Below, in pieces: positions 12,406 to 27,078 of a stretch of DNA of 64,000 nucleotides. The number at the start of each line of letters is the position of its first letter. The stretch's first letter is position 1. The position numbers were made by a program, and so were the translations under genes. Under the pieces are notes generated by a model. The model saw only the letters and a list, made by a program, of their open reading frames with translations. It had not been told where the DNA came from and made no database searches. The stretch covers positions 304,550-368,549 of IMG/VR virus record IMGVR_UViG_3300028676_000003, one strand, 5' to 3'.

Positions 12406-13422
12406 ATGGAAATTAAAACAGAACATAATCCTAAAGATTTTCAAGTTGGAGCGTTGGTTGGACGCTTTCACGTAGATGAATTACACATTGGTCACAGAGA
12501 ACTTATTGACCATGTTATCCAAAACCATAAAAAAGTAATTCTATTCTTAGGAGTTGCTAAAACAGTAGGTAGAAAAAATCCATTGGATTATGCCACTCGT
12601 AAAGCTATGATTCAGTTGGAATATCCTGATATCGTTATTCTTCCACTTGAAGATAAACGTTACAATACTGCTTGGGCCAGCAACTTAGACCATGCATTAA
12701 GCATTCCTTTCGGTGAGAAAAAAGCTCTTATTTATGGTAGCCGTGACTCATTCATTCCATCTTACAAAGAAGGAAAAGGTAGAAATAAAACCGTTGAATT
12801 AGAGCCAAGTGTTGACTATTCAGGAACTGCTGTAAGAGAAAAAATTGCTAGTGAAATAATTAATCATCCATTTTTTAGAGCTGGAATTATTTATTCAGTT
12901 TATGGTGAAAGAGCCAAAACGTTTCCAACAGTAGATATTTGTGCTTACAATGAGCAAGGACAAATCCTTTTGGCTAAGAAGCCTGATGAGAAGCTTTGGA
13001 GATTTGTTGGTGGATTCGTTGATAGAAATGATGGTTCTTATGAAATTGCCGCTAAACGTGAATTCTACGAGGAAACTGGTGGTGATGCCCGTTTAGGGGA
13101 AAAATTAAAATATATTTGCAGTCAAAGCGTTGATGATTGGAGATACCGTGATACAGAAAATGGAATCATGACAACTCTTTTCTTAGGTAGATATGCATTT
13201 GGACAAGCAGTTGCTTCAGATGATTTAGCAAATGGTGGTGACCTTCAATGGGTTGATATCAAAGATTTTAGTAATTTCGATGGAATTAGAACTAAAGTGA
13301 TGCCTGAACACAGAGACCTTATGACCAAATTGATTGATGCTGTTTACGAAGAAGGACTTATTCCAAACATTGGAACTAGACTTCCTGAAAGAGAAGGAAA
13401 TATCACGTATACTCAAGAGTAA
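12406..13422 (+). CDS. nadM: bifunctional NMN adenylyltransferase / ADP-ribose Nudix hydrolase (NadM-Nudix, NatV-like)
   Basis: GRFHVDELHIGH (HxGH), KNPL, YGSRDSF, SGT; Nudix box GGFVD.....AAKREFYEETG. Confidence 0.9.
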   Translation: MEIKTEHNPKDFQVGALVGRFHVDELHIGHRELIDHVIQNHKKVILFLGVAKTVGRKNPLDYATRKAMIQLEYPDIVILPLEDKRYNTAWASNLDHALSIPFGEKKALIYGSRDSFIPSYKEGKGRNKTVELEPSVDYSGTAVREKIASEIINHPFFRAGIIYSVYGERAKTFPTVDICAYNEQGQILLAKKPDEKLWRFVGGFVDRNDGSYEIAAKREFYEETGGDARLGEKLKYICSQSVDDWRYRDTENGIMTTLFLGRYAFGQAVASDDLANGGDLQWVDIKDFSNFDGIRTKVMPEHRDLMTKLIDAVYEEGLIPNIGTRLPEREGNITYTQE

Positions 13423-13446
13423 ATATAAACCAACTAAAAGAATCAT

Positions 13447-14064
13447 ATGAAAGTATTAGAATTACTTGGGATTAACCCAACAAAAGGAGAATTGGTTACA
13501 CTTACTGGTAAAACAGGACATGGAAGAACAAGTATGTTAGTTAAGATTGCTTGCGACTTGGCTAACGAAGGTAAGAGTGTATTGTTTATCAGCGATGAAT
13601 TAGCAATTCATCAAATAGCTGAAAAATGTACTCCATTATTAAAAATCGAGAACCCTAGATTTAAAGCTGTTAGAAGTGATTATCCAGTTGAAATTATTAC
13701 TGATTACTTCGCAGAAGAACAAGACATTGATGTTGTAGTTCTTGATGGTTACTTCGGTAACAAGACCAATTTCAGAGTTCTAGCGCAAAAACACGATACA
13801 TTAATCATAAATACAATTCAAATGAATAAAAGCGGATTTGTTACTGGAGATACAAGACCAATGATGACTTCTGATTGTGTAATTTCGGTTACAAGAATCA
13901 ATGGTAGCTTGACTTTATTGGATAAATTGAAAAATTTCTTCTTGTTTTGGAAACCTAAAAAAGTGGCTCCAAATACACAGTTGGCTTTGATTAAAAACCG
14001 TCATGGTAAACAAACGAAAACCGATATCAACTTCGATTTTCAAAGTTTACAAATAAAAAAGTAA
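13447..14064 (+). CDS. RecA/DnaB-like P-loop domain with degenerate Walker A
   Basis: GKTGHGRTS, LFISDE, VVVLDG, SD.VI, LIKNRHG. Confidence 0.6.
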   Translation: MKVLELLGINPTKGELVTLTGKTGHGRTSMLVKIACDLANEGKSVLFISDELAIHQIAEKCTPLLKIENPRFKAVRSDYPVEIITDYFAEEQDIDVVVLDGYFGNKTNFRVLAQKHDTLIINTIQMNKSGFVTGDTRPMMTSDCVISVTRINGSLTLLDKLKNFFLFWKPKKVAPNTQLALIKNRHGKQTKTDINFDFQSLQIKK

Positions 14065-14094
14065 AAAAAGCTTGTACGGTAAGATATTTTGTTG

Positions 14095-14102
14095 TACCTT
14101 TG
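14095..14102 (+). promoter_or_regulatory. Bacteroidota -7 box TACCTTTG
   Basis: CTTGT upstream. Confidence 0.7.
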
Positions 14103-14120
14103 TCATCTAAATAAAAAGAA

Positions 14121-14753
14121 ATGGACGAACATATTACTAGATTAGTTGACGTGATGGACACCATCAAACATGATGAAGTCACAATCCTAACTGGCCGAAA
14201 TGCTGGTGGGAAATCACTTATCAGAAAACAACTTGTTTTCCGTATTGCCAAAGCCCTAGATAAAGAACCTAAAAATGTCTTTATCCCAAGTGCTTCACAA
14301 GAGCTAAGAACCAAGTCACAGCCAAGTATGGGAGCATTGTCTTCTATTGGTCATGACTTAGAGTGGTTAGCTACTTCTGATAGTACTGTTCACAGCTTGG
14401 AGCAAGTATTCAAGTACCATACTGAAAAGGCAGACTATGTTATCATAGATGAACCTGAAATTGGTATTGGTGAAGAATTGCAATTAGGTATTGCTGATTA
14501 CCTTAATGAGGAAATCGCTAAGTTAAAAGCAATGGGTAAGGGTTGTTTGATTATCTGCCATAGCAGACTTATTGCTAAGAATGTAGTCCATGATACTTTC
14601 ATTAACTTGGAAGGTATGACTGAAGAGGAATGGTTAAATCGTGTTCCTCAAAAGATTTCAGTTGAAGATTTTAAAGCGTTTGCTACGGGATTATTCTCAG
14701 CAATCGGAGACAGAGAAAGAGAAAATAAAGAAAAACAAAAAGAACAAAACTAA
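14121..14753 (+). CDS. ABC-type ATPase domain protein
   Basis: GRNAGGKS, IIDEPEIG, IICHS. Confidence 0.75.
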   Translation: MDEHITRLVDVMDTIKHDEVTILTGRNAGGKSLIRKQLVFRIAKALDKEPKNVFIPSASQELRTKSQPSMGALSSIGHDLEWLATSDSTVHSLEQVFKYHTEKADYVIIDEPEIGIGEELQLGIADYLNEEIAKLKAMGKGCLIICHSRLIAKNVVHDTFINLEGMTEEEWLNRVPQKISVEDFKAFATGLFSAIGDRERENKEKQKEQN

Positions 14754-14754
14754 T

Positions 14755-16338
14755 ATGAGCGGACAAAGAAACCTTGCTAGAAGATTAGAAAGAGCTATCA
14801 ACACTGGGAATATGGATGCTATTAAAGCAATGCAAACTCACTTGTTGAAGGTCCTTGTAAAACCACAAAACCTTATCCTAGCCTCAGATGGTTATAAATA
14901 CTCACACCACAGATTCTATGGTGCTGAAATGACCAAAATGATTTCGTATTGCGAATCAAGAGGTGGGAAATTCTCAGAGACCGTATTCTACGGCCTACAA
15001 ATATTCCTTAAACAATACTTAGAAGGAATCGCTATCACAACAGAAGAAATTGACCAAGCACAAGAAATCCTTGGTAGTCAATTAGGTATCTTCGGCCGTG
15101 ATGATGTATTCGACAGAAGCAAATTTGACTATATCGTTGAAAAACACGGTGGTAAGCTTCCAATCGCTATAAAAGCTGTTCCTGAAGGAACGGTTGTAAA
15201 TACCAAAAATGTATTATTCGTTATTGAGAGTCTTGACGATAATTGTGCATGGTTAACCAATTTCTTAGAAAGCCTTTTGCTTCAAGTTTGGTACCCAATT
15301 ACGGTTGCTACACTTTCAAGAGAAGTGAAAAAAATCGTATTGAAAGCGTTCAATAAATGCACATCTTATGATGAAGCAACTATTGATTTCCTTGTTCAAT
15401 TCGTATTAAACGACTTCGGATTCCGTGGAACGTCAAGCGTTCAGTCTGCCAGTGTTGGTGGTTCTGCTCACTTGGTTAACTTTAGAGGTTCTGATACCGT
15501 TGTTGCTAGTGACTTGATTAGAGAAATGTACAATACCAATACCGTTTACGGCTTAAGTATTCCTGCTACAGAACACTCTATTATGACACTTAAAGGTGAA
15601 GAAGGAGAGCTTGATATGATGAGAAGAGTACTTACAACATTCCCTACAGGACTTGTTGCTTGCGTATCTGATTCATACAATATCTTTAGAGCATGTTCTC
15701 AGTATTGGGGTCAAGACTTGATTGATTTAATCTTGAGCAGACCTGCGACACCTGGAAACCAACTAGTTATCCGTCCTGATTCAGGTCACGTAATCAGAAC
15801 ACTTAAGGAAATCTTTAGTATCTTGTTTGACAAGTTCGGTTATACAGTAAATGAAAAAGGTTACAAGGTATTGCCACCACAAGTACGTGTAATTCAAGGT
15901 GATGGTGTTAACTTAAACTCAATCATTGAAATTTACCAAATGCTTGAAGACGAAAAGATTTCTCCTGAGAACTTAGCGTTAGGTATGGGTGGTAAATTGC
16001 TTCAAGCTGATATCGATAGAGATACACAAAACTTTGCTACAAAGGCTTGTTCTGCTATCGTTGACGGTAAAAAGGTTGATATTATCAAGTCACCAACAGA
16101 AATGGATGCTGATGGTAACATCAGTCAATCATTCAAAAAATCTAAAAAAGGTGAACTTAAATTGGTCTTAAATGACGATGGAAGAACATACAGAACAGTA
16201 ACGTCATTAGACGCTGAGTATGACCACGTTAAAGATGAATTGGTTCCAGTTTTCAGAATGGGTGAAATCCTTGTTGACTATGGATTTGAAGAAATCCGTG
16301 AGAGAGCAAGGGTAAAAGACTACGAATTGGTAGCATAA
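14755..16338 (+). CDS. nadV: nicotinamide phosphoribosyltransferase (NAMPT/NadV)
   Basis: SDGYKYSH, LNDFGFRG, SIPATEHS, VSDSY, VIRPDSG, IQGDG, GMGGKLLQ, KKSKKG; start ATG 14755. Confidence 0.92.
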   Translation: MSGQRNLARRLERAINTGNMDAIKAMQTHLLKVLVKPQNLILASDGYKYSHHRFYGAEMTKMISYCESRGGKFSETVFYGLQIFLKQYLEGIAITTEEIDQAQEILGSQLGIFGRDDVFDRSKFDYIVEKHGGKLPIAIKAVPEGTVVNTKNVLFVIESLDDNCAWLTNFLESLLLQVWYPITVATLSREVKKIVLKAFNKCTSYDEATIDFLVQFVLNDFGFRGTSSVQSASVGGSAHLVNFRGSDTVVASDLIREMYNTNTVYGLSIPATEHSIMTLKGEEGELDMMRRVLTTFPTGLVACVSDSYNIFRACSQYWGQDLIDLILSRPATPGNQLVIRPDSGHVIRTLKEIFSILFDKFGYTVNEKGYKVLPPQVRVIQGDGVNLNSIIEIYQMLEDEKISPENLALGMGGKLLQADIDRDTQNFATKACSAIVDGKKVDIIKSPTEMDADGNISQSFKKSKKGELKLVLNDDGRTYRTVTSLDAEYDHVKDELVPVFRMGEILVDYGFEEIRERARVKDYELVA

Positions 16339-16541
16339 TGAAAGTCGGTGAATCAACCAAGGTTTTGATTAGACTAGCATTGTTCAATACTAGGGTATTA
16401 AGGAATTATAACGACCTTAAGGTTTATTTCATACAATGCCCTAGACTAGAACAACTCTATCTAAATGAATTAACTGAGGTCATGAATGTTGTAACAGGAG
16501 TTGATTTTTCAATTGATGAAATTTTATATGAAACTAGGTAA
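16338..16541 (+). CDS. MxLG-family micro-protein (MKVGE)
   Basis: coupled to nadV. Confidence 0.55.
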   Translation: MKVGESTKVLIRLALFNTRVLRNYNDLKVYFIQCPRLEQLYLNELTEVMNVVTGVDFSIDEILYETR

Positions 16542-16737
16542 ACAAATTAGTTGGAACAACCTTCTTAGTCATGGTAGTGTTTTCAGTTTTAAATACTCAA
16601 CGAGAGATGCTGAAGGTTATATCGCTGACTATTGGCGGTCCTGTGCTAAAAACAAGATTTATCTTGTTGAATTACCTGAAACTGATGTAGTTACAATATC
16701 TATTGAAACTTTTTTTGAAAAAAATTTGGTAGATTAA
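16528..16737 (+). CDS. MxLG-family micro-protein (MKLGK)
   Basis: ATGAAACTAGGTAAA start, overlaps upstream stop. Confidence 0.6.
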   Translation: MKLGKQISWNNLLSHGSVFSFKYSTRDAEGYIADYWRSCAKNKIYLVELPETDVVTISIETFFEKNLVD

Positions 16738-16748
16738 AAAATTATTTG

Positions 16749-16756
16749 TACCTTTG
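16749..16756 (+). promoter_or_regulatory. Bacteroidota -7 box TACCTTTG
   Basis: upstream AAAATTTGGTAGATTA (16721-16736) identical to 62962-62977. Confidence 0.75.
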
Positions 16757-16814
16757 TACCTGTAATTAAAAATATAAACTCTTGGGCGAGACATAAAACC
16801 CAAATCTTAAAATT

Positions 16815-17717
16815 ATGAAGAAAATACTCTTTTTACTAGCAGTATTCACTGCGTTATTCACGTCATGTTCGACGGATGATGAAAACACATCAAGTGTTAA
16901 AACGGCAAGTGTAGCTTTGACAACTGAAACAGCTTCAGTAACAGGAAAACAAGTTAAAAAACCTGCAAGCATTCCTGCTTGGGTTGATGGGTTTTCTGTA
17001 AAAGCTAAATCAAATGTATACGCAAACTATGAAGTTTCGGATAACTATACATTTGACCAACAAAATGGTGCGACAAATATCATCTTGGACAACGTAGCAT
17101 TAGGAAGCAATACATTCACAGCTTCAACTACAACAAATTCAGCGCAATTTTATCAATTGACAAATTACACTGCAAGTGGAAATTCATTAGATGCTAAATT
17201 CTTAGCAGGATTAAACAACATTAAAGCAGACAATCCTTATGTAATCTACACAGGTCTTGTTCCAAATGCAAATGTTACTGATTCTAATGTTAATTTGGTT
17301 ACAATTCCAATGACTACAGTTTACGGTCGTATCTTATCAGTGTTTCAATTGAATCAAGCTCTTAAAAATGCAGGTTACCAAGCTAAGGTTACTGTAACTA
17401 TCACAAGTCCAGTTGCTGGTTCTAACTCAGCGTTAGATGCTACAACTAAAAATGACGAATTAGTTACATTCAAATGGAGCAATTTAAAATCTGTTGCAGG
17501 TGCCAAGGTAACTTACAAGGTTGAAGTATCTAAGATTAATTCTCAAAGTACAATTGTAAAAACTTACACATTGACTCAAGATATCTTAGCTTCTAAATCA
17601 ATCTCTTGTTACTACACTATTACAGACGATGGTATTGTGTTGAAAAATCCAAACCAAGGTTTAAGCTTAAGCTTCCAAGATTGGGAAGAAGTTAATTGTA
17701 ATGATTGCAATAACTAA
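16815..17717 (+). CDS. lipoprotein, probably surface-exposed, beta-rich
   Basis: signal peptide II LFTSC followed by acidic STDDE. Confidence 0.8.
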   Translation: MKKILFLLAVFTALFTSCSTDDENTSSVKTASVALTTETASVTGKQVKKPASIPAWVDGFSVKAKSNVYANYEVSDNYTFDQQNGATNIILDNVALGSNTFTASTTTNSAQFYQLTNYTASGNSLDAKFLAGLNNIKADNPYVIYTGLVPNANVTDSNVNLVTIPMTTVYGRILSVFQLNQALKNAGYQAKVTVTITSPVAGSNSALDATTKNDELVTFKWSNLKSVAGAKVTYKVEVSKINSQSTIVKTYTLTQDILASKSISCYYTITDDGIVLKNPNQGLSLSFQDWEEVNCNDCNN

Positions 17718-17738
17718 GTAAAAAAGAAGAAATAATCA

Positions 17739-17772
17739 AAAACCCTTATCTTTAATAGGTAAGGGTTTTTTT
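17739..17772 (+). terminator. intrinsic terminator
   Basis: AAAACCCTTA/TAAGGGTTTT stem plus T-run. Confidence 0.75.
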
Positions 17773-17783
17773 AAAACTACCAA

Positions 17784-18383: not shown

Positions 18384-18385
18384 AT

Positions 18386-18583: not shown

Positions 18584-18593
18584 ATAAAAAACT

Positions 18594-19220: not shown

Positions 19221-19222
19221 CA

Positions 19223-19426: not shown

Positions 19427-19427
19427 T

Positions 19428-19928
19428 ATGAAAGTATATCGTTACGAAGAATCAGTTGATGAAGTTTCAAACATACAAGGACCTTCTATATTTCTAGCGG
19501 GACCAACTGTTAGAGGAAATCAACCGCACTTAACGTCATGGCGTTTTGAAGCTATTGAAGAATTTAAACGACAAGGTTTCGAAGGAAGTCTTATCATCCC
19601 TGAATTTACTTCTAAGACTGAATCTGACAAAGGTAAAGAATGGATTCCGTTATGGGAGTCCAATGGTCTTAAAAAAGCTGATGTTATCTTGTTTTGGATT
19701 CCTAGAACAAGAGAATTAATTGCTTTAACAACCAATATGGAATTTGGTTTTTGGCAAGGCAAAGAGCCTCAAAAAATGGTTTATGGTAGACCTGACGATG
19801 CATATCGTATTGGTTATTTGGATGTGATGTGGAAAGCAGTCGCAAAAGAAGAAGGTACTTATGAACCGTTGATTTATAACACAATGGCCGATACTATTTC
19901 TGCCAGTATTAAAAAAGCCATGGTGTAA
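19428..19928 (+). CDS. nucleoside 2-deoxyribosyltransferase-like protein
   Basis: IFLAGPT, SWR, ILFWIPR, TTNMEFG. Confidence 0.75.
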   Translation: MKVYRYEESVDEVSNIQGPSIFLAGPTVRGNQPHLTSWRFEAIEEFKRQGFEGSLIIPEFTSKTESDKGKEWIPLWESNGLKKADVILFWIPRTRELIALTTNMEFGFWQGKEPQKMVYGRPDDAYRIGYLDVMWKAVAKEEGTYEPLIYNTMADTISASIKKAMV

Positions 19929-19954: not shown

Positions 19955-19962
19955 TATTTATA
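19955..19962 (+). promoter_or_regulatory. putative second-class promoter TATTTATA
   Basis: 11 nt upstream of HNH ATG. Confidence 0.35.
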
Positions 19963-19973
19963 TTAAAAGATAT

Positions 19974-20510
19974 ATGGAAACTAAAAAATGTACTAAATGT
20001 GGTTTTGATAAACCAAAAGATGAATTTTTTAAACGTAAAAATTCTAAAGATGGTTGTAGGTCGCATTGTAAATTATGCGAAAAGAAATCTAATTCAGTTA
20101 GAGAGTCAAAATACTCAGAAATTCGTAAAGAATATCGTCAAGGTGAGACTTATAAGAATATAAAACGTGTTTATTATCTAAATAATAAAGATAAAATACT
20201 GAATGAAAACGCTCTATGGAGACAAACCTTCAAAGGGCGTTTATTATCATATAAACGAGCCGCAAAAAAAAGAAATATTATTTGGGGATTAACTGACGAA
20301 GAGTTTTTATCTTTTTGGCAATTATCATGTGATTATTGTGGTGATGAAATTGAAACTATTGGTATTGATAGGGTTGATAATTCTATTGGGTATAATATAG
20401 ATAATTGTAAACCTTGTTGTTCTGTTTGTAATAAAATGAAAATGGATTTAACAGAAACGGAGTTTATAAATAAAATAACAAAAATATTAAATAAATTAAA
20501 AAATGGTTAA
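19974..20510 (+). CDS. free-standing HNH-type (homing) endonuclease with N-terminal Zn ribbon
   Basis: KKCTKC...EF.K...KDG....CKLC; CDYCG, GIDRVDN..GY..DNC.PCC..CN. Confidence 0.85.
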   Translation: METKKCTKCGFDKPKDEFFKRKNSKDGCRSHCKLCEKKSNSVRESKYSEIRKEYRQGETYKNIKRVYYLNNKDKILNENALWRQTFKGRLLSYKRAAKKRNIIWGLTDEEFLSFWQLSCDYCGDEIETIGIDRVDNSIGYNIDNCKPCCSVCNKMKMDLTETEFINKITKILNKLKNG

Positions 20511-20961
20511 ATTTATTGATGGTGACTTGGTAAAACAATCATCAGAATTTGATGTAATAGCACATGGCGCAAATTGTTTTTGTACAATGGGTAGTGGTAT
20601 TGCACCACAAATTAAGCATAAGTTCCCTGAAGCCTACGCAGTTGACTGTGCTACAGTTAAAGGTGATGAAGCTAAGCTTGGAACAATTACTCATACAGTT
20701 GAGCAAAACGAACCGATTGTTGTTAACATCTACAGCCAATATGGGTTTAGTCGTCAACACGGTAAGATGGACTTAGACTACGATGCTTTGCGTTCAGGTT
20801 TAAGGCTTATGAAACAGAAGTTTTCAGGTAAAACCTTTGGACTACCTAAGATTGGGGCTGGACTTGCTGGTGGAGATTGGGACGTGATTATTAAAATCAT
20901 CGAAGAGGAAATGCGTGGCGAGTATGTAACGATTGTAAATTGGGTACCTGATGTTAACTAG
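20503..20961 (+). CDS. macro domain protein (ADP-ribose hydrolase-like)
   Basis: GDL, IAHGANCFCTMGSGIA, LPKIGAGLAGGDW. Confidence 0.9.
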   Translation: MVKFIDGDLVKQSSEFDVIAHGANCFCTMGSGIAPQIKHKFPEAYAVDCATVKGDEAKLGTITHTVEQNEPIVVNIYSQYGFSRQHGKMDLDYDALRSGLRLMKQKFSGKTFGLPKIGAGLAGGDWDVIIKIIEEEMRGEYVTIVNWVPDVN

Positions 20962-21709
20962 TAAAGAATTTATCTCACTAAGTCGTAAAGACTTGGTTGA
21001 TAGACTTAATAGTATTGTTAGTAATATCAAACCTAACGATAGTCCTGAAGGGATTAGACATAAGATGTTTGAATTGCTACAGAAAAATGTTGACTTCAAG
21101 ATTCGACAAGATACTTACAGCGGAAGCGAAATTAGCGGTGTTCTTGATGAACGCTTAAGATTTAGCTTGAAGGTCTCAACTAAGAAAGTTGGTGATAAGT
21201 TTGTTGTAGGTGGTTTTAAGATTTCAGAAATTACATACAGAATACCTCATTATAAGTTTAGTTTTGTTGATATCAATCAATGGACAATTAGGTTAGGCGA
21301 TAGCTTCTATACAACTGGAAAGCCAAATACAATCTATTTGACTCATTTAAGAAAACCTCTTAAAGAGTTATTAAATGTTGAGAAACTTATTGAACTTTCT
21401 GATGAACAAGAGCGAGTATTTGATAAGGATTATAAGGGTTTTTATTACTCATTATCTAAACAAATGGCCGATGGTGTAATTGAAAGACAATTCAGCAAGA
21501 TAACGGAATATGCATTTAAACGAATTAATGCTAAGAAAGAAGACTTAACGTTCTTCCCACAACCTTATCGTGATGAATTACCTGATGAAATGAATGCACT
21601 TGAAATATTTGACCAAATCTGTAAGGTTGTTGCATCAATAAATGCTAGTCTTATGGTTAAAGTCATAAAGGAAGAAATATTTAAGACACTCGATGGTGCA
21701 AGTAATTAA
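20951..21709 (+). CDS. hypothetical protein
   Basis: 252-aa ORF between the two macrodomain genes. Confidence 0.7.
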   Translation: MLTSKEFISLSRKDLVDRLNSIVSNIKPNDSPEGIRHKMFELLQKNVDFKIRQDTYSGSEISGVLDERLRFSLKVSTKKVGDKFVVGGFKISEITYRIPHYKFSFVDINQWTIRLGDSFYTTGKPNTIYLTHLRKPLKELLNVEKLIELSDEQERVFDKDYKGFYYSLSKQMADGVIERQFSKITEYAFKRINAKKEDLTFFPQPYRDELPDEMNALEIFDQICKVVASINASLMVKVIKEEIFKTLDGASN

Positions 21710-22133
21710 AGGCGATATCTTTGACTCTGATACTCAGACACTGGTTAACACTGTTAACTGCGTAGGAGTGATGGGAAAGGGTATCGCTTTGATATTTAAA
21801 CAAAAATATCCTAAGATGTTTGCCCGTTACAAAGAGCTTTGTGATAAGAAGCTGATAAAGGTTGGTAGCCTTTGGTTGTATAAAGCTGAAGCTCAGTGGG
21901 TTTTAAACTTCCCAACCAAGGACCATTGGAGAAATCCAAGTGAAATTGAATACTTGAAATTGGGCCTAAAGAGGTTTGTTGAGACTTATGAGGAAAAGGG
22001 AATAACAAGCATCTCATTTCCGTTGTTGGGAGCCAGCAATGGTGGACTTGACCCTGATGTTTCATTGAGACTTATGAAAGAATATTTAAAAGATGTAAAA
22101 ATTCCTGTTTTTATCTATGATAATCGAAAATAA
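21693..22133 (+). CDS. DarG-like macro domain protein
   Basis: LVNTVNCVGVMGKGIAL.FK, NFPTKDHWR, SISFPLLGASNGGL. Confidence 0.85.
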   Translation: MVQVIKGDIFDSDTQTLVNTVNCVGVMGKGIALIFKQKYPKMFARYKELCDKKLIKVGSLWLYKAEAQWVLNFPTKDHWRNPSEIEYLKLGLKRFVETYEEKGITSISFPLLGASNGGLDPDVSLRLMKEYLKDVKIPVFIYDNRK

Positions 22134-22138
22134 TTTAG

Positions 22139-22146
22139 TACCTTTG
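22139..22146 (+). promoter_or_regulatory. Bacteroidota -7 box TACCTTTG
   Basis: consensus match in intergenic gap. Confidence 0.6.
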
Positions 22147-22170
22147 CATAATAACTCTAAAAAGAAAGAT

Positions 22171-22449
22171 ATGCAAATAGATTGTAGACAAGACTTCATT
22201 GATTTAGGTTTCAAAGAACGTGGCAAATCTGCTAACGTTTGGAGTATTGAAATAAATGACTATACAACTATGGTTTGTCATTTTAGAAATGATAGTTGGT
22301 CGGTTGAGAATTGGTTGACTATTGAATTTGAACAAGGAAGCAAAAAACTTAAAAATAAATTCATCAAGTTTAACAACTTCGTAACAACAAAAGAAGAATT
22401 ATTGTTAATTGTTAATTTAATAATGAAAACCAATAAAAAACAAATATGA
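22171..22449 (+). CDS. hypothetical protein
   Basis: ATG 22171 behind promoter. Confidence 0.6.
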   Translation: MQIDCRQDFIDLGFKERGKSANVWSIEINDYTTMVCHFRNDSWSVENWLTIEFEQGSKKLKNKFIKFNNFVTTKEELLLIVNLIMKTNKKQI

Positions 22450-22889
22450 GTATAATAAAATCGATTTTAACAAATCATTTCGACTATAAGATAAAAAGAA
22501 ATTGGGACCGAACATATTGGGCCTTTGATATTCATGGTACAATCCTAAGACCTAACTATACATACGGCAACACGCCTGATGATTTTTACCCTTGGGCCAA
22601 AGAAACACTTCAACTTATTACGAAGTTACCTGATGTTGTTACATTTCTTTATACTTGTTCTCATCCGCACGAAATAGAAGAGTATATTAAGCTCTTCGCT
22701 TCATTTGATATTAAGTTCAATTATATCAATGAAAACCCTGAAGTTGAAACTGACCTTAAAGGTTACGGAAACTACGATAAGAAACCATATATGAACGTTT
22801 TGTTTGAAGACAAAGCTGGATTTGACCCTGAGAGTGATTGGGAGTTGGTTTATGATTTATTAACTGAAAAATATGGCTCAGCTACCTAG
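22446..22889 (+). CDS. HAD-like hydrolase
   Basis: AFDIHGTI, LYTCS, KPY..VLFEDKAGF. Confidence 0.75.
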   Translation: MSIIKSILTNHFDYKIKRNWDRTYWAFDIHGTILRPNYTYGNTPDDFYPWAKETLQLITKLPDVVTFLYTCSHPHEIEEYIKLFASFDIKFNYINENPEVETDLKGYGNYDKKPYMNVLFEDKAGFDPESDWELVYDLLTEKYGSAT

Positions 22890-23253
22890 AATAGGCGAAT
22901 ATAATAGATTCAGACAACACCGACACGAGTTGGCAGATATGGTCAAGATTGATATGGAATCAGATGAAGTTGTTTATGTTCACAAAACTGAAATAAAAAC
23001 ATTACTTTTAGAATATATCGAAAATGACTTGGATTATTTTTCTAAGAATGCATCTGACAATATCAAAAATGAATTCAGAGAAAGACTTGATACAAAACTC
23101 AAAGACATAGAATCAAGCCTAAATAGTGAAATCAACAAACAATTTGATAGACTTGCTGAACGAATAGTAACAGCAACTACAAATAGAATAATAGAAGCAG
23201 AAGTCAATCGAAGGGTTGATGAGAAGCTTCAAAAATTAAAAGAATTATTATAA
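22873..23253 (+). CDS. coiled-coil hypothetical protein
   Basis: helical heptad-like C-terminus. Confidence 0.6.
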   Translation: MAQLPRIGEYNRFRQHRHELADMVKIDMESDEVVYVHKTEIKTLLLEYIENDLDYFSKNASDNIKNEFRERLDTKLKDIESSLNSEINKQFDRLAERIVTATTNRIIEAEVNRRVDEKLQKLKELL

Positions 23254-23546
23254 TGAAAAGAATTTTAACACTAGTTGCATTTGGTATAATGTTTGCCTTG
23301 ATGCTAACAGGTTGCGCCGATGCGGCTCAAGTAACATGTACAAGCTCCACAGAACACATCTATGGATTTTGGGGTGGAACATGGCACGGAATGATAACTC
23401 TACCATCATTTATTGGTAGTCTTATTTGGGATGATGTTGCAATTTATGCAGTAAACAATAACGGTGCTTGGTACGATTTTGGATTCGTTGGTGGATTCTT
23501 CATCATGTTCAGGTTTGCAGTAGCAATATTAAAACTATTAAGATAA
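23253..23546 (+). CDS. lipoprotein / membrane protein
   Basis: LTGC lipobox; GFWGGTWHG, WYDFGF. Confidence 0.7.
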   Translation: MKRILTLVAFGIMFALMLTGCADAAQVTCTSSTEHIYGFWGGTWHGMITLPSFIGSLIWDDVAIYAVNNNGAWYDFGFVGGFFIMFRFAVAILKLLR

Positions 23547-24292
23547 TGACAAAGAAAAAAATAGCAGTATTTACTGGTGCTGGTGTTAGCAAGGAATCAG
23601 GGGTTGATACATTTAGAGATGCAAAAGACGGATTATGGGAAAACCATAAGATAGCTGATGTAGCAAGTATCACTGGTTGGTTTGCGGACCCAAGCAAGGT
23701 CTTAGGTTTCTACAATGAGAGAAGAAGACAATTACCTACAGTTCATCCAAACAAGGCCCACAGGCTTATTGCTGAACTAGAGAACTACTTTGATGTAACT
23801 GTTATCACACAAAATGTTGATGATTTACACGAAAGAGGTGGTTCAAACAATATTCTTCACTTGCATGGTGAATTAACCAAGGCGAAGAGTTCACACAGAA
23901 CTGGTAAGGCAGGTTACGATATAACTGATTCAGTTGACATTGGATATGAAGATATCAAATTAGGTGACCTTTGTGAAGAGAACAAAGCACAAATGAGACC
24001 TGACATTGTTTGGTTTGGTGAATATCCTTATATGGTAGATAGAGCTTATCAAGCAGTTAGAAATGCTGATATCTTGCTTATCATTGGAACAAGCCTTGAG
24101 ATAACATATACAATCGATATGCTACAGAATGCAAAAACTGATTGTGAAATTATCTATATCGACCCAAGTCCATCAACGATACTTGATAGATATAGCATGA
24201 ACGTTACGTATTTAAAAAAACCTGCGGTAGAAGGAGTTGGAGAAGTAGCAAATCGTTTGATGAACGAGGCTATGCTGAAAGAAGAGGAATAA
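23546..24292 (+). CDS. cobB: Sir2/CobB-family NAD-dependent deacylase
   Basis: TGAGVSKESG..TFRD, TQNVDDLHERGG, HLHGEL, RPDIVWFGE, IGTSL; start ATG 23546. Confidence 0.92.
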   Translation: MTKKKIAVFTGAGVSKESGVDTFRDAKDGLWENHKIADVASITGWFADPSKVLGFYNERRRQLPTVHPNKAHRLIAELENYFDVTVITQNVDDLHERGGSNNILHLHGELTKAKSSHRTGKAGYDITDSVDIGYEDIKLGDLCEENKAQMRPDIVWFGEYPYMVDRAYQAVRNADILLIIGTSLEITYTIDMLQNAKTDCEIIYIDPSPSTILDRYSMNVTYLKKPAVEGVGEVANRLMNEAMLKEEE

Positions 24293-24309
24293 TAACCAAA
24301 TAAATTAAT

Positions 24310-24663
24310 ATGGTTTATTTTAGAGACGGAGTATTACTATCAATTGGTAAGATACAAGACTTCGGAACATTCAAAAAAAGAGAATTTGTTCTGAAGACCC
24401 TTGATTACTACCCTGAAGAAATAAAGATGGAATTCATCAACGAAAATGTTGGAGTTCTTGATAAGTATTCAGTTGGTGAAAAGGTTACCTTAGCGTTCAC
24501 ATTAAAGGGAAACAAACATAACGGCAAACACTTCGTAAACATCAGAGCAGTCGCTATTGGCGAGTACGAAGGTGGACGAACAGAAGCCGAACTTAAGACG
24601 CTAGTCACTATGCACATTGATGTACAAGAGTTGATTAACGCAGGTAAAATAAGCGACAGATAA
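24310..24663 (+). CDS. DUF3127-like OB-fold protein
   Basis: KREFVL.T..YPE.I..EF, V.GEKVT..F.L.G, F.NI.A. Confidence 0.65.
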   Translation: MVYFRDGVLLSIGKIQDFGTFKKREFVLKTLDYYPEEIKMEFINENVGVLDKYSVGEKVTLAFTLKGNKHNGKHFVNIRAVAIGEYEGGRTEAELKTLVTMHIDVQELINAGKISDR

Positions 24664-24950
24664 TGGAAGTAACAGAAGAAGAAAGATTACAAGCTAAAGA
24701 ATTTTGGAACTCTTCGGATATAATGGCTAGAGAATACATTATTAATGAATATGCTACCTATTTGAATATCATTGGTGTTTATGAGGAAGATATAGAGATT
24801 TCTGAACATGATGCATTAGAGATAATGCAAATGGATTGGGAAACACTCATAAAATATGAAGGAGATTATCTACCTGATAGAATGCAAGCAAGTGATTTAG
24901 AAGAAAGTCTATATTATCATTTAGGACTAGCTGATTATAAAAAAGAATAA
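24663..24950 (+). CDS. acidic hypothetical protein
   Basis: coupled ORF. Confidence 0.6.
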   Translation: MEVTEEERLQAKEFWNSSDIMAREYIINEYATYLNIIGVYEEDIEISEHDALEIMQMDWETLIKYEGDYLPDRMQASDLEESLYYHLGLADYKKE

Positions 24951-24952
24951 AG

Positions 24953-25081
24953 ATGAAAATAACAAAATTATTACACGACAAAAAAAATAGAATAGCGAGA
25001 TTCGGTTTTGGTTTACATGACGGAGAATGGTTTATTCGAGTTGATTTATGGTGGTGTGGTTACAGATTAAAAAGCAAATAA
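24953..25081 (+). CDS. 42-aa hypothetical protein (not in ORF track)
   Basis: MKITKLLHDKKNRIARFGFGLHDGEWFIRVDLWWCGYRLKSK fills gap exactly. Confidence 0.5.
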   Translation: MKITKLLHDKKNRIARFGFGLHDGEWFIRVDLWWCGYRLKSK

Positions 25082-25082
25082 A

Positions 25083-25436
25083 ATGTCATTAGTAAGACTA
25101 GAATTAAAAGAAGAACACATCAAGTTACTTAAGCATCTAAGATGGAGCGTAAAAGATAACTTGATTCAAGGTATTTCAAACGATGAAGATGCTGTACCGT
25201 TCGGAGAAAATAACATATACGAGGCAATTGACTTGATTCTTAATGGAATGCCACCAGCATTTGACCCATTTGAAACTGAAGAACTGCCTGAGTATTCTGA
25301 GGAACAGAAAGCAGAATGGGATAAGTTATATGCTGAATTACCTACGGCCTTGGATATTATCTTATTCAACGGAAGCTTCGAATTGGGGAAATACAAGACC
25401 AAGTATCACGACAGACATTGGAAAAAAGAAAAATAA
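25083..25436 (+). CDS. phage hypothetical protein
   Basis: EHIKLL, PFGENN, ELPTALDIIL. Confidence 0.7.
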   Translation: MSLVRLELKEEHIKLLKHLRWSVKDNLIQGISNDEDAVPFGENNIYEAIDLILNGMPPAFDPFETEELPEYSEEQKAEWDKLYAELPTALDIILFNGSFELGKYKTKYHDRHWKKEK

Positions 25437-25440
25437 TTAA

Positions 25441-25477
25441 AATAACCTATCATTTATTTGGTAGGTTATTTTTTTTT
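25441..25477 (+). terminator. intrinsic terminator overlapping promoter
   Basis: AATAACCTA/TAGGTTATT stem plus T-run. Confidence 0.7.
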
Positions 25478-25480
25478 ATG

Positions 25481-25488
25481 TACCTTTG
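25481..25488 (+). promoter_or_regulatory. Bacteroidota -7 box TACCTTTG
   Basis: TTTGGTAG upstream. Confidence 0.75.
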
Positions 25489-25513
25489 TAGGGTAATAAT
25501 AAAATAAGACATT

Positions 25514-25849
25514 ATGGCTTACTTAGGTGAAACACCAATAGAAATTTCAGAAACTGAATTCAAAGACTTCACACCACAAGATTGGGCGTTGTATTACATT
25601 CAAATGTATGGTGGGTTTGATGGAGCACATCACAAAGATTGGGTACTTGACCAAGTAGCTAGAATTCTTCATGGCACACCACTAACTATGGTTGAAGCCA
25701 AATGGGACGACCATGAACCTGAATTACGATTCACTACTGTTGAACCACCATCTCAAGCTTATCTTGATTGGGTTTTAGCTATGAAAGGTGAGTACGATGA
25801 GGAAAATGACGAGTATGAGTATGGATATGATGAAGGAATTGCACCATGA
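25514..25849 (+). CDS. phage hypothetical protein
   Basis: YGGFDGAHHKDWVLDQVARIL. Confidence 0.7.
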   Translation: MAYLGETPIEISETEFKDFTPQDWALYYIQMYGGFDGAHHKDWVLDQVARILHGTPLTMVEAKWDDHEPELRFTTVEPPSQAYLDWVLAMKGEYDEENDEYEYGYDEGIAP

Positions 25850-26094
25850 CATACCTAACAGCCCTAGAAATAGCGAGTAACCATCCAAATGGTGATATCA
25901 AGATAATGGAAGGTCAAGATAAAGAAACTCTTAAATGGGCGGGTTTTATCTTCCTGATGAGAAATGGTGAGATTCATAAGCTTATGATATCTATGGAGCC
26001 AAGTGATATATGGGCGGGATTCGATACTCAAGAAGAAGCTACAACAAAAATGCAAGAGCTTATAGACTTTGCAATTAATTACGTTAACCCTTAA
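25846..26094 (+). CDS. hypothetical protein
   Basis: ATGA-coupled. Confidence 0.6.
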   Translation: MTYLTALEIASNHPNGDIKIMEGQDKETLKWAGFIFLMRNGEIHKLMISMEPSDIWAGFDTQEEATTKMQELIDFAINYVNP

Positions 26095-26103
26095 AACTAA
26101 ACA

Positions 26104-27078
26104 ATGTCACAATCAGTATTAGTATCACTTGACGGCCGTACAGAATTGGCCTTAAATATTATCAAAAGCGTTGCAAAACACTTTGGAGACCCAAACAATT
26201 ATGTCTTTTTAGACTTCGTTAATTCACAAAAATTCTCTGATGGAGAACTATGTGTGGATTATAAAAATTCTATTCGTGGAAAGCGAGTTTATATCCTTAC
26301 AAGTCCGAATACTTCAGACGAGATTATGAAAATGACTCTAGCGATAGATGCCGCTAAGAGAGCGGCCGCAAAGGAAATCATCGTAATTCTACCTTATTTC
26401 CCATATGCCCGTCAAGATAAAAAAGACCAAGCTCGTGGACCAATTGGAGCAACAATTATTTCAAAAATGATTCAAGTTCTTGGTGCTACAGGTATCATTA
26501 CATATGACTTACATGCTGACCAAATTCAAGGTTACTTTGATATTCCAGTAACTCACTTAGAAGGAAAGAATGTCTTTGATTCTTACATTGCTAAGATTGC
26601 TGATGAAGATACTGTTCTTTGTGGACCTGATGCAGGTTCTGCCAAGAGAGTTAAGAGAATGAAAGACCAATTACAAACATATCATAATACTTCACTTAAC
26701 ATTGTCATGTTAGACAAGAGCCGTAAAGAGGCAAATGTTATTGACGAAATGATTATCATTGGTGATGTAACTGGTAAGAACGTTATTATTGTTGATGATA
26801 TGGTTGATACCGCAGGGACACTATGTAAGGCGGCTGAGGTCCTAATGAATGCAGGTGCTAAGAGTGTAAGAGCCGTGATTAGTCATGGTGTTTTATCAGG
26901 TCCAGCTTATGATAGAATCGAAGCTAGTGTTTTAACTGAATTGGTTGTTAGTGATTCATTAGATGTTAAACCAAGTCCTAAGATTAAGGTAATTAGCGTT
27001 GAACAACAAATAGCATTTGCTATCTGTGCAATCAATAGTGATTCAAGTTATGAAGGACTAAGAAAAGAAAGATTCTAA
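26104..27078 (+). CDS. prs: ribose-phosphate pyrophosphokinase (PRPP synthetase) family
   Basis: FSDGE, PYFPYARQDK, DLHADQIQGYF, PDAGS, IIVDDMVDTAGT, HGVLSG. Confidence 0.92.
   Translation: MSQSVLVSLDGRTELALNIIKSVAKHFGDPNNYVFLDFVNSQKFSDGELCVDYKNSIRGKRVYILTSPNTSDEIMKMTLAIDAAKRAAAKEIIVILPYFPYARQDKKDQARGPIGATIISKMIQVLGATGIITYDLHADQIQGYFDIPVTHLEGKNVFDSYIAKIADEDTVLCGPDAGSAKRVKRMKDQLQTYHNTSLNIVMLDKSRKEANVIDEMIIIGDVTGKNVIIVDDMVDTAGTLCKAAEVLMNAGAKSVRAVISHGVLSGPAYDRIEASVLTELVVSDSLDVKPSPKIKVISVEQQIAFAICAINSDSSYEGLRKERF

What the first reader, a model, noticed from the sequence alone, without database searches (positions are those of the whole stretch)
12406..27078. Closed-loop NAD+ reconstitution from ADP-ribose + nicotinamide
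Seen: NMNAT-Nudix (12406), NAMPT (14755) and PRPP synthetase (26104). Known: NAMPT + NMNAT is the NARP2 / KVP40 NadV-NatV salvage route countering NAD-depleting defences (Thoeris, DSR, SIR2-type), and NadM-Nudix domains hydrolyse ADP-ribose to AMP + ribose-5-P. Inference: with its own Prs the phage can recycle both NADase products (ADPR to R5P to PRPP; Nam to NMN to NAD+), a four-step loop distinct from NARP1. Alternatively the Prs-like protein is an Adps.
Basis: partly seen in the sequence, partly recalled or inferred. Interest (0 to 1): 0.65.

Follow-up and report, generated by a model that had tools for sequence, protein, structure and literature searches.

The report
Phage NAD salvage with own PRPP synthetase
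A 368-kb peat jumbo phage carries the known two-enzyme NAD+ rebuilding pathway (NARP2) together with a genuine PRPP synthetase and several ADP-ribose-processing genes, so it can probably rebuild NAD+ without draining the host's PRPP; this is a sensible but untested extension of a known phage counter-defence.

Summary
All three genes are real and sit at the stated coordinates. They are a NadM/NatV-type NMN adenylyltransferase fused to a Nudix domain (12406-13422), a Nampt-type nicotinamide phosphoribosyltransferase (14755-16338) and a PRPP synthetase (26104-27078). The protein passes NCBI's curated Prs model where four real Adps fail by about 200 bits. It keeps the canonical PP loop, ribose-5-P loop and C-terminal module. 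It is 43-47% identical to Bacteroidota Prs but only 19-24% to Adps.

A canonical Prs recurs in 11 of 16 large NatV-carrying viral genomes and lies within about 0.2-11 kb of NAMPT in all 10 that have both. NAMPT is the only PRPP consumer recognised in this genome. That supports a PRPP-self-sufficient NARP2.

The carbon loop (ADPR to R5P to PRPP) is chemically sound but inferred. It was proposed for bacteria in 2008 and 2013. Prs probably lies in its own transcription unit.

Verdict: new variant of a known kind, moderate interest.

The parts
12406..13422 (+). NatV/NadM-type bifunctional NMN adenylyltransferase (about residues 10-150) fused to a Nudix hydrolase (about residues 170-310). Proposed steps: NMN + ATP -> NAD+, and ADPR -> AMP + ribose-5-P.
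   Evidence: Pfam and NCBIfam. A family profile hits Francisella NadM-Nudix 2qjt (E 4e-22) and Synechocystis 2qjo (E 3e-15) over both domains. The AlphaFold model (pLDDT 81.6) has these same bifunctional NMNAT/ADP-ribose pyrophosphatases as its top six Foldseek hits. Invariant residues across 32 homologues: H27/G29/H30, T141/R144, R218/E219/E222/E223.
14755..16338 (+). Nampt-type nicotinamide phosphoribosyltransferase. Proposed step: nicotinamide + PRPP -> NMN.
   Evidence: NF006629 506 bits against cut-off 405. 376-390 bits to solved NAMPTs. 38% identity and 298 bits in one segment to KVP40 NadV, against 100-162 bits in split alignments to four Adps-linked Namats. It is the only NAPRTase-family gene in the genome.
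26104..27078 (+). Canonical class I ribose-phosphate diphosphokinase (Prs). Proposed step: ribose-5-P + ATP -> PRPP + AMP.
   Evidence: NF002320 313.5 bits against cut-off 297, where four real Adps score 72-100. 194-216 bits to E. coli, B. subtilis and human PRPS structures. 43-47% identity to Bacteroidota Prs against 19-24% to Adps. Canonical PP loop, R5P loop, catalytic-loop Lys/Arg and C-terminal module are all present. Separated from the Adps clade with 100/99-100 support.
23468..24292 (+). Context gene: CobB-type Sir2 NAD-dependent protein deacylase. It is the only NAD consumer recognised in the genome (NAD+ -> nicotinamide + O-acyl-ADPR). The true start may lie a little downstream, because relatives' products are 245-256 aa.
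   Evidence: PF02146 139 bits. phrog_2162 E 3e-47. NF001753 189 bits, below its cut-off of 243. Single copy. Lies between NAMPT and Prs in 5 of 16 related records and in L019-L021.
21693..22133 (+). Context gene: DarG-like macrodomain. It is a candidate orphan anti-DarT ADP-ribosyl glycohydrolase and/or O-acyl-ADPR deacylase, and would release free ADPR.
   Evidence: Pfam Macro 68 bits. NF048014 DarG 182 bits over the macro part only. 114-120 bits and about 50% identity to DarG macrodomain structures 5m3i and 5m31, with the NFPTK-HWR segment conserved.
20503..20961 (+). Context gene: a second, more divergent macrodomain protein.
   Evidence: Pfam Macro 35.8 bits. Its best NCBIfam hit is the DarG macro at 43.5 bits.
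19428..19928 (+). Context gene: nucleoside 2-deoxyribosyltransferase-like protein of unknown substrate. Relatives have it or a NADAR protein at the same position.
   Evidence: PF15891 34.9 bits. Syntenic PF15891 in L019 and NADAR in L021.
25439..25472 (+). Terminator-like hairpin (14-bp stem followed by a T-run) in the gap between gene 25083-25436 and gene 25514-25849. It probably separates the Sir2/Macro/NAMPT side from the transcription unit that holds Prs.
   Evidence: Consensus scan: 16 terminator-like sites in the region against 6.9 +/- 2.8 in shuffles. This is the longest + strand stem. It is a pattern match only.

Best explanation
The block encodes a PRPP-self-sufficient version of NARP2.

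Proposed steps:
1. Nampt (14755-16338) joins nicotinamide to PRPP to give NMN.
2. The N-terminal domain of the NatV-like protein (12406-13422) adenylates NMN to NAD+.
3. The phage's own canonical Prs (26104-27078) makes the PRPP from ribose-5-P and ATP. NAD+ rebuilding therefore does not depend on, or drain, the host PRPP pool.
4. The C-terminal Nudix domain of the NatV-like protein, by homology to NadM-Nudix ADP-ribose pyrophosphatases, can split ADPR into AMP and ribose-5-P. The ribose of ADPR can then re-enter through Prs.

Possible sources of ADPR are host NADase defences, the phage's DarG-like macrodomains and its Sir2.

Shown here: the family identity of the three enzymes, intact catalytic motifs, non-membership in Adps, and conserved linkage of Prs with the NAD genes in related genomes.

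Inferred: substrate specificities, that Prs output goes to Nampt, that ADPR-derived ribose-5-P matters quantitatively, and that the purpose is counter-defence.

From standard enzymology, the route costs 2 ATP per NAD+ (3 if Nampt's facultative ATP coupling is counted), against 1 for NARP1.
For: Enzyme identities.

Canonical Prs, not Adps.

Linkage:
- In three relatives on 340-376 kb contigs (Prs 65-74% identical), the order NatV, NAMPT, NDT-like or NADAR, Macro, Sir2, Prs is kept while the intervening genes vary.
- Of 16 NatV-carrying IMG/VR records of at least 200 kb, 15 have NAMPT and 11 have a Prs scoring 281-308 bits on NF002320. That includes 7 of the 9 records that are at least 90% complete.
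- Prs lies 0.2-11 kb from NAMPT in all 10 records that have both, and directly beside it in G010 and G013.
- Prs identity within this set falls to about 35%, so the association has survived deep divergence.

Dedicated use: the only PF00156 phosphoribosyltransferase domain in the 368-kb genome is Prs itself, which leaves NAMPT as the only recognised PRPP consumer.

Motive: Osterman et al. (10.1101/2024.02.11.579819) state that NARP2 consumes PRPP and may carry a metabolic cost for that reason.

Chemistry: Rodionov 2008 (PMC2330246) and Cialabrini 2013 (PMC3680494) describe ADPR -> ribose-5-P (Nudix) -> PRPP -> NAD recycling. They cite the NadM-Nudix fusion and the ADPR-regulated prs-nadV operons as evidence.
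Against: - Prs is 9.8 kb and about 20 genes from NAMPT, and a terminator-like hairpin lies between them. It is not an operon like NARP1.
- Related genomes share ancestry, so conserved proximity may be inherited synteny. The AU test does not reject a single origin of the linked Prs genes (p 0.385).
- 5 of 16 NatV-carrying records lack Prs, two of them at least 93% complete. KVP40 has none. Prs is therefore dispensable for NARP2.
- Prs also occurs in a phage without NAMPT, Microcystis phage MaAM05.
- In relatives the same region also carries nucleotide-metabolism genes: dCMP deaminase, a 5'-nucleotidase and a MazG-like gene.
- The Nudix box has a one-residue insertion, and its substrate is not known. 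Iyer et al. 2022 read the NadM Nudix as an NAD+-cleaving regulator.
- No RNA data exist for this phage.
Confidence: 0.6

Rival explanations
1. Prs is a general auxiliary metabolic gene that raises PRPP for host purine, pyrimidine and other nucleotide synthesis during replication of a 368-kb genome. Its position near the NAD genes is inherited gene order with no dedicated coupling.
For: Phage Prs occurs without NAMPT in Microcystis phage MaAM05. Relatives carry dCMP deaminase, NT5C, HAD and MazG-like genes in the same stretch. Prs is probably a separate transcription unit. A single origin of the linked Prs genes is not rejected.
Against: No other type-I phosphoribosyltransferase is encoded in the genome. 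Prs stays within about 11 kb of NAMPT or NatV in all 11 records that have it, although identity falls to 35% and the intervening genes turn over. It is directly adjacent to NAMPT in two records.
Confidence: 0.3
2. The block is mainly a housekeeping cycle for the phage's own NAD-consuming enzymes and not a counter to host NADases. The CobB-type Sir2 deacylates proteins, a macrodomain turns O-acyl-ADPR into ADPR, Nudix and Prs recycle the ribose, and Nampt and NMNAT recycle the nicotinamide.
For: Sir2 and two macrodomains lie between NAMPT and Prs. Every Sir2-bearing related record also has Prs, and Sir2 always sits between NAMPT and Prs. Sir2 is the deacylase type, not a defence-type NADase. 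No LigA or Tpt1 is present, so Sir2 is the only recognised consumer.
Against: Six Prs-bearing records have no Sir2 and most lack a detectable Macro, so the Prs-NARP2 link does not depend on them. The better-scoring macrodomain is DarG-like, which points to counter-defence. This reading is also compatible with the main explanation.
Confidence: 0.25
3. The Nudix domain does not feed the loop. It trims NAD+/NADH to regulate pool size, or acts on another nucleotide-diphosphate substrate. In that case only the nicotinamide half is recycled, and ribose-5-P comes from host pentose-phosphate metabolism.
For: Iyer et al. 2022 describe the NadM Nudix as cleaving NAD+ to regulate its level. From memory, not checked here: KVP40 NatV Nudix was reported active on ADPR, NAD+ and NADH. 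The Nudix box here has a one-residue insertion. After the NadM-Nudix hits, the next fold matches are RppH and NudC.
Against: The closest solved relatives, by sequence profile and by fold over both domains, are enzymes deposited as NMN adenylyltransferase/ADP-ribose pyrophosphatases, one of them with ADPR bound. The catalytic REx2EE residues are invariant in the family.
Confidence: 0.15
4. The Prs-like protein is an Adps that pyrophosphorylates ADPR, making this a NARP1-like route.
For: It belongs to the same PRPS superfamily and hits phrog_619 at 159 bits. In unrooted trees the long Adps branch joins near the viral Prs lineage, which could be long-branch attraction.
Against: - NF002320: 313.5 bits against 72-100 for four real Adps.
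- Identity: 19-24% to Adps against 43-47% to Bacteroidota Prs.
- It has the canonical PP loop, not the remodelled one, and has the C-terminal alpha11-alpha12 module whose loss defines Adps (PMC13586617).
- It is not adjacent to the NAMPT-family gene, whereas 97% of Adps are.
- Its partner is Nampt-type, not Namat-type.
Confidence: 0.02

Closest known systems
NARP2 (KVP40 NadV + NatV; Osterman et al. 2024, after Lee et al. 2017)
   Same: It has a Nampt-type phosphoribosyltransferase and a NadM-type NMN adenylyltransferase fused to Nudix in one jumbo-phage genome. NAMPT is 38% identical to KVP40 NadV. The two-domain layout matches KVP40 NatV.
   Different: KVP40 has no Prs, and NARP2 as described draws on host PRPP. 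Here a canonical Prs travels with the pathway, along with Sir2, macrodomains and an NDT-like gene. The NatV-like protein is only about 27% identical to KVP40 NatV. The two NARP2 genes are separated by two other genes.
NARP1 (Adps + Namat)
   Same: It also rebuilds NAD+ from both cleavage products, ADPR and nicotinamide. It also pairs a PRPS-fold enzyme with a NAMPT-fold enzyme.
   Different: NARP1 keeps ADPR intact (ADPR -> ADPR-PP -> NAD+) in two steps at a cost of one ATP. The route here would break ADPR to ribose-5-P and rebuild NAD+ through PRPP and NMN in four steps, at 2-3 ATP. The Prs here is not an Adps and the NAMPT is not a Namat.
Bacterial NAD recycling: NrtR-controlled prs-nadV operons and NadM-Nudix (Rodionov 2008; Cialabrini 2013; Huang 2008 structures 2qjt and 2qjo)
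   Same: The same four reactions and the same logic: ADPR -> ribose-5-P -> PRPP -> NMN -> NAD+. A dedicated second prs is paired with nadV, and an ADPR pyrophosphatase is fused to NMNAT.
   Different: Here the genes are carried by a virus, no NrtR regulator was seen, and the genes are spread over 15 kb rather than forming an operon. The phage Prs is nearest to housekeeping Bacteroidota Prs. Some bacterial prs-nadV pairs may in fact be Adps-Namat, since Osterman et al. note Adps-clade genes in bacteria.
NARP3 (PnuC + NadR)
   Same: It is a phage-encoded NAD+ restoring pathway.
   Different: No PnuC is present in this genome, and the adenylyltransferase is NadM-type, not NadR-type.
Phage orphan DarG-like antitoxins (PMC11825919, PMC11481870, PMC13309987)
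   Same: The macrodomain at 21693-22133 is a stand-alone DarG-type macrodomain, about 50% identical to solved DarG macrodomains.
   Different: It has not been tested against DarT. It sits inside an NAD-salvage block, which was not a feature of the abstracts seen.

Membership tests
NARP2 | Nampt of the KVP40 NadV type, distinct from the Adps-linked Namat clade | tested here: met
   298 bits and 38% identity in one segment to KVP40 NadV, against 100-162 bits in split alignments to four Namats. NF006629 is above its cut-off.
NARP2 | An Nmnat homologue encoded in the same phage genome | tested here: met
   NadM-type NMNAT domain with invariant HxGH and T141/R144. Profile and fold hits to NadM-Nudix. 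It lies 1.3 kb upstream of NAMPT.
NARP2 | Nampt prefers PRPP over ADPR-PP, and the pathway rescues phage from NAD-depleting defences | not testable with these tools
   Needs enzyme assays and infection assays.
NARP1 / Adps | Membership of the Adps clade | tested here: not met
   Adps forms a separate clade with 100/99-100 support. Identity to Adps is 19-24%. NF002320 gives 313.5 bits against 72-100 for Adps.
NARP1 / Adps | Loss of the C-terminal alpha11-alpha12 module and a remodelled PP loop (PMC13586617) | tested here: not met
   The C-terminal about 30 residues align with E. coli Prs, and the PP loop is canonical. Adps sequences end earlier and have a different loop.
NARP1 / Adps | The gene lies immediately next to a Namat gene (97% of Adps) | tested here: not met
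   Prs is 9.8 kb from the only NAMPT-family gene. The four reference Adps genes are each directly followed by Namat.
Class I ribose-phosphate diphosphokinase (Prs) | Passes the curated family model and keeps the catalytic and substrate loops | tested here: met
   NF002320 313.5 bits against 297, and TIGR01251 289 against 113. FSDGE, RQD, PP loop, D-K-x-R flexible loop and DDM-DT-GT R5P loop are all present.
Class I ribose-phosphate diphosphokinase (Prs) | Makes PRPP from ribose-5-P and ATP | not testable with these tools
   Needs an enzyme assay.
NadM-Nudix bifunctional NMNAT/ADP-ribose pyrophosphatase | Two-domain architecture with NMNAT motifs and a Nudix catalytic core | tested here: met
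   Both domains align to 2qjt and 2qjo. REx2EE is invariant. The Nudix box carries a one-residue insertion before the RE.
NadM-Nudix bifunctional NMNAT/ADP-ribose pyrophosphatase | ADP-ribose is the preferred Nudix substrate | not testable with these tools
   Inferred from family membership only. The paper listing the ADPR-binding residues (PMC2258087) was not available.
NARP3 | A PnuC transporter plus a NadR kinase/adenylyltransferase | tested here: not met
   No PF04973 match in the 368-kb genome.
DarG-type macrodomain (context gene 21693-22133) | A macrodomain of the DarG/TARG1 type that keeps the conserved NFPTK-HWR segment | tested here: met
   NF048014 182 bits over the macro part. 5m3i 120 bits with the NFPTK-HWR segment conserved. 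It lacks DarG's C-terminal DarT-binding half, so it scores below the full-length cut-off of 250. That the lysine in this segment is catalytic is from memory of DarG/TARG1 work and was not checked here.

The most novel reading that the evidence does not exclude
A clade of peat, soil and freshwater jumbo phages that probably infect Bacteroidota carries an integrated NAD+/ADP-ribose counter-defence island. In it, a captured housekeeping Prs turns NARP2 into a self-contained four-step loop that recycles both halves of cleaved NAD+. The loop would be fed with ADPR by host NADases, by phage DarG-like or NADAR enzymes that strip ADP-ribose from DNA, and by a phage sirtuin. This would be a third way for phages to reuse ADPR, distinct from NARP1, and it would remove the PRPP cost thought to limit NARP2.
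Probability: 0.4. Interest if true: 0.6.

Novelty: new variant of a known kind. Interest (0 to 1): 0.45.

Why it matters
NAD+ depletion is one of the commonest bacterial anti-phage strategies, and NARP1, NARP2 and NARP3 are the known phage answers. Osterman et al. pointed to PRPP consumption as NARP2's weakness. A phage that brings its own PRPP synthetase would remove that weakness and, through the fused ADPR pyrophosphatase, reuse the ribose as well.

If confirmed, this would explain why Prs rides with NARP2 in many jumbo phages. It would also give a clean sequence rule for telling true phage Prs from Adps in annotation, since many Adps are still labelled ribose-phosphate pyrophosphokinase. 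Finally, it would offer a three-enzyme cassette for NAD+/NMN regeneration.

If not confirmed, the block is still a well-defined example of a jumbo-phage NAD/ADP-ribose gene island.

Tried and rejected
- **Adps reading.** Rejected.
- **Independent acquisitions of Prs next to NAMPT.** The ML tree separates G010/G013 and LR756504 from the window lineage. The AU test does not reject one clade (p 0.385), so I do not claim it.
- **Second viral Prs lineage (L013-L018).** Checked for NARP2 genes and none found. These records are only 13-52% complete, so the result is uninformative.
- **P-loop protein 13447-14064, conserved just after NatV.** Considered as a possible ribosylnicotinamide or ribose kinase. 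It is a RecA/KaiC/DnaB-C-like ATPase, so I dropped it as a pathway part.
- **Other NAD consumers.** No LigA, no Tpt1 and no PnuC in the genome.
- **Megablast of the region against GenBank phages.** No match.
- **Expression.** Only DNA runs from peat metagenomes hold the sequence and there is no RNA run.
- **Papers not held.** Lee 2017 on KVP40 and Huang 2008 on NadM-Nudix. Statements about KVP40 NatV substrate preference are from memory and marked as such.
- **Sigma-70 promoter scan.** No enrichment: 58 sites against 64 expected. It would not suit a Bacteroidota host anyway.
- **Not run.** The large representative-protein search and complex prediction were not needed.

Full report
**Setting**

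The window is the last 64 kb of a 368,549-bp viral record that CheckV rates 100% complete. GC content is 34%, and 121 of 130 called genes lie on the + strand. Near-identical DNA is found only in peat metagenomes, and no RNA run holds it. No GenBank phage is close at the DNA level. By protein similarity, the nearest GenBank phage records are uncultured huge phages of 460-735 kb.

- ORF 12406-13422 has a Nudix domain (E 1e-14) behind a weak cytidylyltransferase-like N-terminus. Its best curated-model hits are the bifunctional NMN adenylyltransferase/Nudix models.
- ORF 14755-16338 passes the curated NAMPT-type model (506 bits against 405). It scores 376-390 bits against solved NAMPTs.
- ORF 26104-27078 has all three Prs domains and passes NF002320 (313.5 against 297).
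- The genome holds one NAMPT-family gene and one Prs gene.

**The NMNAT-Nudix protein**

Single-sequence hits were weak, so I aligned 32 homologues of 50-85% identity. Many of them are named bifunctional NMN adenylyltransferase/nudix hydrolase by JGI.

- The profile finds Francisella NadM-Nudix (2qjt, E 4e-22) and Synechocystis slr0787 (2qjo, E 3e-15), with both domains aligned to the C-terminal helix.
- An AlphaFold model (pLDDT 81.6) has these same entries as its top six Foldseek hits. They are deposited as NMN adenylyltransferase/ADP-ribose pyrophosphatases. Generic Nudix proteins follow, covering the C-terminal half only.
- The HxGH motif (H27, G29, H30), the second NMNAT motif (T141, R144) and the Nudix core (R218, E219, E222, E223) are invariant. 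The Nudix box has a one-residue insertion.
- KVP40 NatV has the same layout but is only about 27% identical.

ADPR hydrolysis is therefore a family-level inference, not something shown here.

**Prs or Adps?**

- Phage-database hits to the Prs split into two groups. About 27 records are full-length matches at 36-47% identity. About 470 records match only residues about 96-265 at 23-31% identity. The second group comes from Vequintavirus-like, FelixO1-like, ICP1 and Bacillus phages.
- Four of the second group that I fetched are 280-297 aa and are each followed directly by a NAMPT-family gene, which is the NARP1 layout.
- Identity of the window protein: 19-24% to these four, 35% to E. coli Prs, 43-47% to Bacteroidota Prs.
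- It keeps the canonical PP loop, the ribose-5-P loop, the flexible-loop Lys/Arg in the same K-S-R pattern as Bacteroidota enzymes, and the whole C-terminal module. Liu et al. 2026 (PMC13586617) give the remodelled PP loop and loss of the alpha11-alpha12 module as the Adps signatures.
- Control on NF002320: the window protein and two clade relatives score 300-314, E. coli Prs scores 533, and the four Adps score 72-100.
- In trees, Adps is a separate clade (100/99-100) at the end of a very long branch. Caveat: that branch joins the unrooted tree near the viral Prs lineage. With branches this long, that may be attraction and cannot be interpreted.
- The nearest cellular Prs proteins are all Bacteroidota (43-52% identity). 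This suggests capture of a host housekeeping gene and a Bacteroidota host.

**Nampt or Namat?**

The window enzyme aligns in one piece with KVP40 NadV (298 bits, 38% identity). It aligns in split pieces with the four Adps-linked Namats (100-162 bits). It is on the Nampt side.

**Is Prs tied to the NAD genes?**

- The Prs has at least 120 relatives at 65-87% identity, on contigs of up to 376 kb.
- Three such contigs keep the order NatV, NAMPT, NDT-like or NADAR, Macro, Sir2, Prs, Thg1, with different genes in between.
- From 80 viral loci with a NatV-like gene, I searched the whole records of the 16 that are at least 200 kb and are held:

| Component | Records with it (of 16) | Note |
|---|---|---|
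| NAMPT | 15 | |
| Prs | 11 | 281-308 bits on NF002320; 7 of the 9 records at least 90% complete |
| Sir2 | 5 | always between NAMPT and Prs; always in a record with Prs |
| Macro | 4 | |

- Prs lies 0.2-11 kb from NAMPT in all 10 records with both. It lies 3 kb from NatV in the one record with no NAMPT hit. It is directly beside NAMPT in G010 and G013.
- Prs identity to the window's protein falls to about 35% in this set.
- The ML tree puts G010/G013 and the huge phage LR756504 apart from the window lineage. The AU test does not reject a single clade (p 0.385), so repeated acquisition is not shown.
- In the window's genome the only type-I phosphoribosyltransferase domain is Prs itself, so NAMPT is the only recognised PRPP consumer.

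Evidence against coupling:
- KVP40 has no Prs.
- A Microcystis phage has a Prs and no NAMPT.
- Five NatV records lack Prs.
- Relatives carry nucleotide-metabolism genes in the same stretch.
- A strong terminator-like hairpin at 25439-25472 probably puts Prs in its own transcription unit.

**What else is in the block**

- 23468-24292 is a CobB-type Sir2 deacylase (PF02146 139 bits; NF001753 189 bits, below its cut-off). It is the only recognised NAD consumer, because LigA and Tpt1 are absent.
- 21693-22133 is a stand-alone DarG-type macrodomain (182 bits on the macro part of the DarG model). It is about 50% identical to DarG structures, with the NFPTK-HWR segment conserved.
- 20503-20961 is a weaker macrodomain.
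- 19428-19928 is nucleoside 2-deoxyribosyltransferase-like.

Phage orphan DarG-like antitoxins that neutralise DarT are already published. One relative has a NADAR protein at the same position. Iyer et al. note that NADAR replaces Macro in some DarT-DarG-like systems.

These genes give the block a counter-defence flavour, and each would release free ADPR, which is the Nudix substrate. They also allow a housekeeping reading: Sir2 makes O-acyl-ADPR, Macro makes ADPR, and Nudix, Prs, Nampt and NMNAT regenerate NAD+.

**Mechanism and how sure**

Most likely (0.6), the block is NARP2 made independent of host PRPP by a dedicated canonical Prs. The fused ADPR pyrophosphatase would let the ribose of ADPR re-enter through ribose-5-P. 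By standard enzymology this costs 2 ATP per NAD+ (3 with Nampt's facultative ATP coupling), against 1 for NARP1.

- Enzyme identities: about 0.9.
- Prs serves Nampt: about 0.6.
- ADPR-derived ribose-5-P is a significant source: about 0.4.

**Novelty**

The chemistry is established for bacteria. Rodionov 2008 describes ADPR-regulated prs-nadV operons and states that ADPR can supply ribose-5-P for PRPP. Cialabrini 2013 states the same and cites the NadM-Nudix fusion.

NARP2 is known. The jumbo-phage NAD papers I could read do not mention PRPP or Prs. The only phage papers that link ribose-phosphate pyrophosphokinase with NAMPT concern NARP1-type phages.

The linkage of a canonical Prs with NARP2 therefore appears undescribed in the library searched. 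It is a modest extension: a new variant of a known kind.

Noticed in passing
window 23468-24292: A CobB-type Sir2 (NAD-dependent deacylase type, not a defence-type NADase) is encoded by the phage between NAMPT and Prs. It is single copy in the genome and syntenic in relatives. What a jumbo phage deacylates is unknown.
   Followed up: partly
window 21693-22133 and 20503-20961: Two stand-alone macrodomain proteins. The first is about 50% identical to solved DarG macrodomains, with the NFPTK-HWR segment conserved, which makes it a candidate orphan anti-DarT antitoxin. The second is a weak DarG-like match.
   Followed up: partly
L021:5142-5630 (relative; same position as window 19428-19928): A NADAR-domain protein replaces the nucleoside 2-deoxyribosyltransferase-like gene at the syntenic position next to Macro in one relative. 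NADAR replaces Macro in some DarT-DarG-like systems (Iyer et al. 2022), so the slot may hold interchangeable ADP-ribose-removing enzymes.
   Followed up: no
L019:1828-3471; also records G001, G007, G008, G013: In some relatives the NAMPT slot holds a very divergent NAMPT-like protein of 547-561 aa. It is about 22% identical to the window NAMPT, to KVP40 NadV and to Namats alike. It scores only 78-98 bits against NAMPT structures and 23-59 bits on PF04095. These genomes still carry a canonical-scoring Prs. Its substrate is open.
   Followed up: partly
window 13447-14064: A 205-aa RecA/KaiC/DnaB-C-like P-loop ATPase directly follows the NatV-like gene here. Proteins of similar size (206-222 aa) occupy the same position in relatives L019 and L021. 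Its function is unknown and it does not look like an NAD-pathway kinase.
   Followed up: yes
window 36879-37334: A second, stand-alone Nudix hydrolase (151 aa) of unclear specificity, with weak hits to NAD+ diphosphatase, RppH and MutT models. It is conserved in relatives next to tRNA_bind and IF3-like genes. A third Nudix lies outside the window at G000:247205-247501.
   Followed up: partly
window 28883-29674, 43524-45515, 4430-5542, 46372-47364, 7581-8399: Other notable genes: a Thg1-like tRNA-His guanylyltransferase, an RNase R/II-type exoribonuclease (RNB with cold-shock and S1 domains), an HD phosphohydrolase fused to an AAA_33 kinase-like domain, a radical SAM protein and a bestrophin-type channel protein. 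Together they hint at RNA repair or processing functions near the NAD block.
   Followed up: no
window 25439-25472: A 14-bp-stem hairpin followed by a T-run on the + strand lies in the 77-bp gap before gene 25514-25849. It is the clearest terminator-like site in the block. Terminator-like sites are enriched in 12000-27600 (16 against 6.9 expected).
   Followed up: no
trees: In unrooted Prs trees, the very long Adps branch attaches at the base of the viral, NARP2-linked Prs lineage and not among cellular Prs. This could be long-branch attraction. If real, it would suggest that Adps arose from a phage-borne Prs. It cannot be resolved with these data.
   Followed up: partly
L022-L101; All 80 nearest cellular Prs proteins, with one Chlorobiota and one unclassified exception, are from Bacteroidota, and the phage DNA is found in peat metagenomes. 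This points to a peat-dwelling Bacteroidota host. Host assignment was not pursued further.
   Followed up: no
phage records, e.g. H76 MZ501063, H63 NC_012749, H86 MW794184: Hundreds of GenBank phage genes that are Adps by sequence and context are still annotated as ribose-phosphate pyrophosphokinase. NF002320 score (about 300 or more against about 100 or less) separates the two cleanly in the sequences tested.
   Followed up: partly
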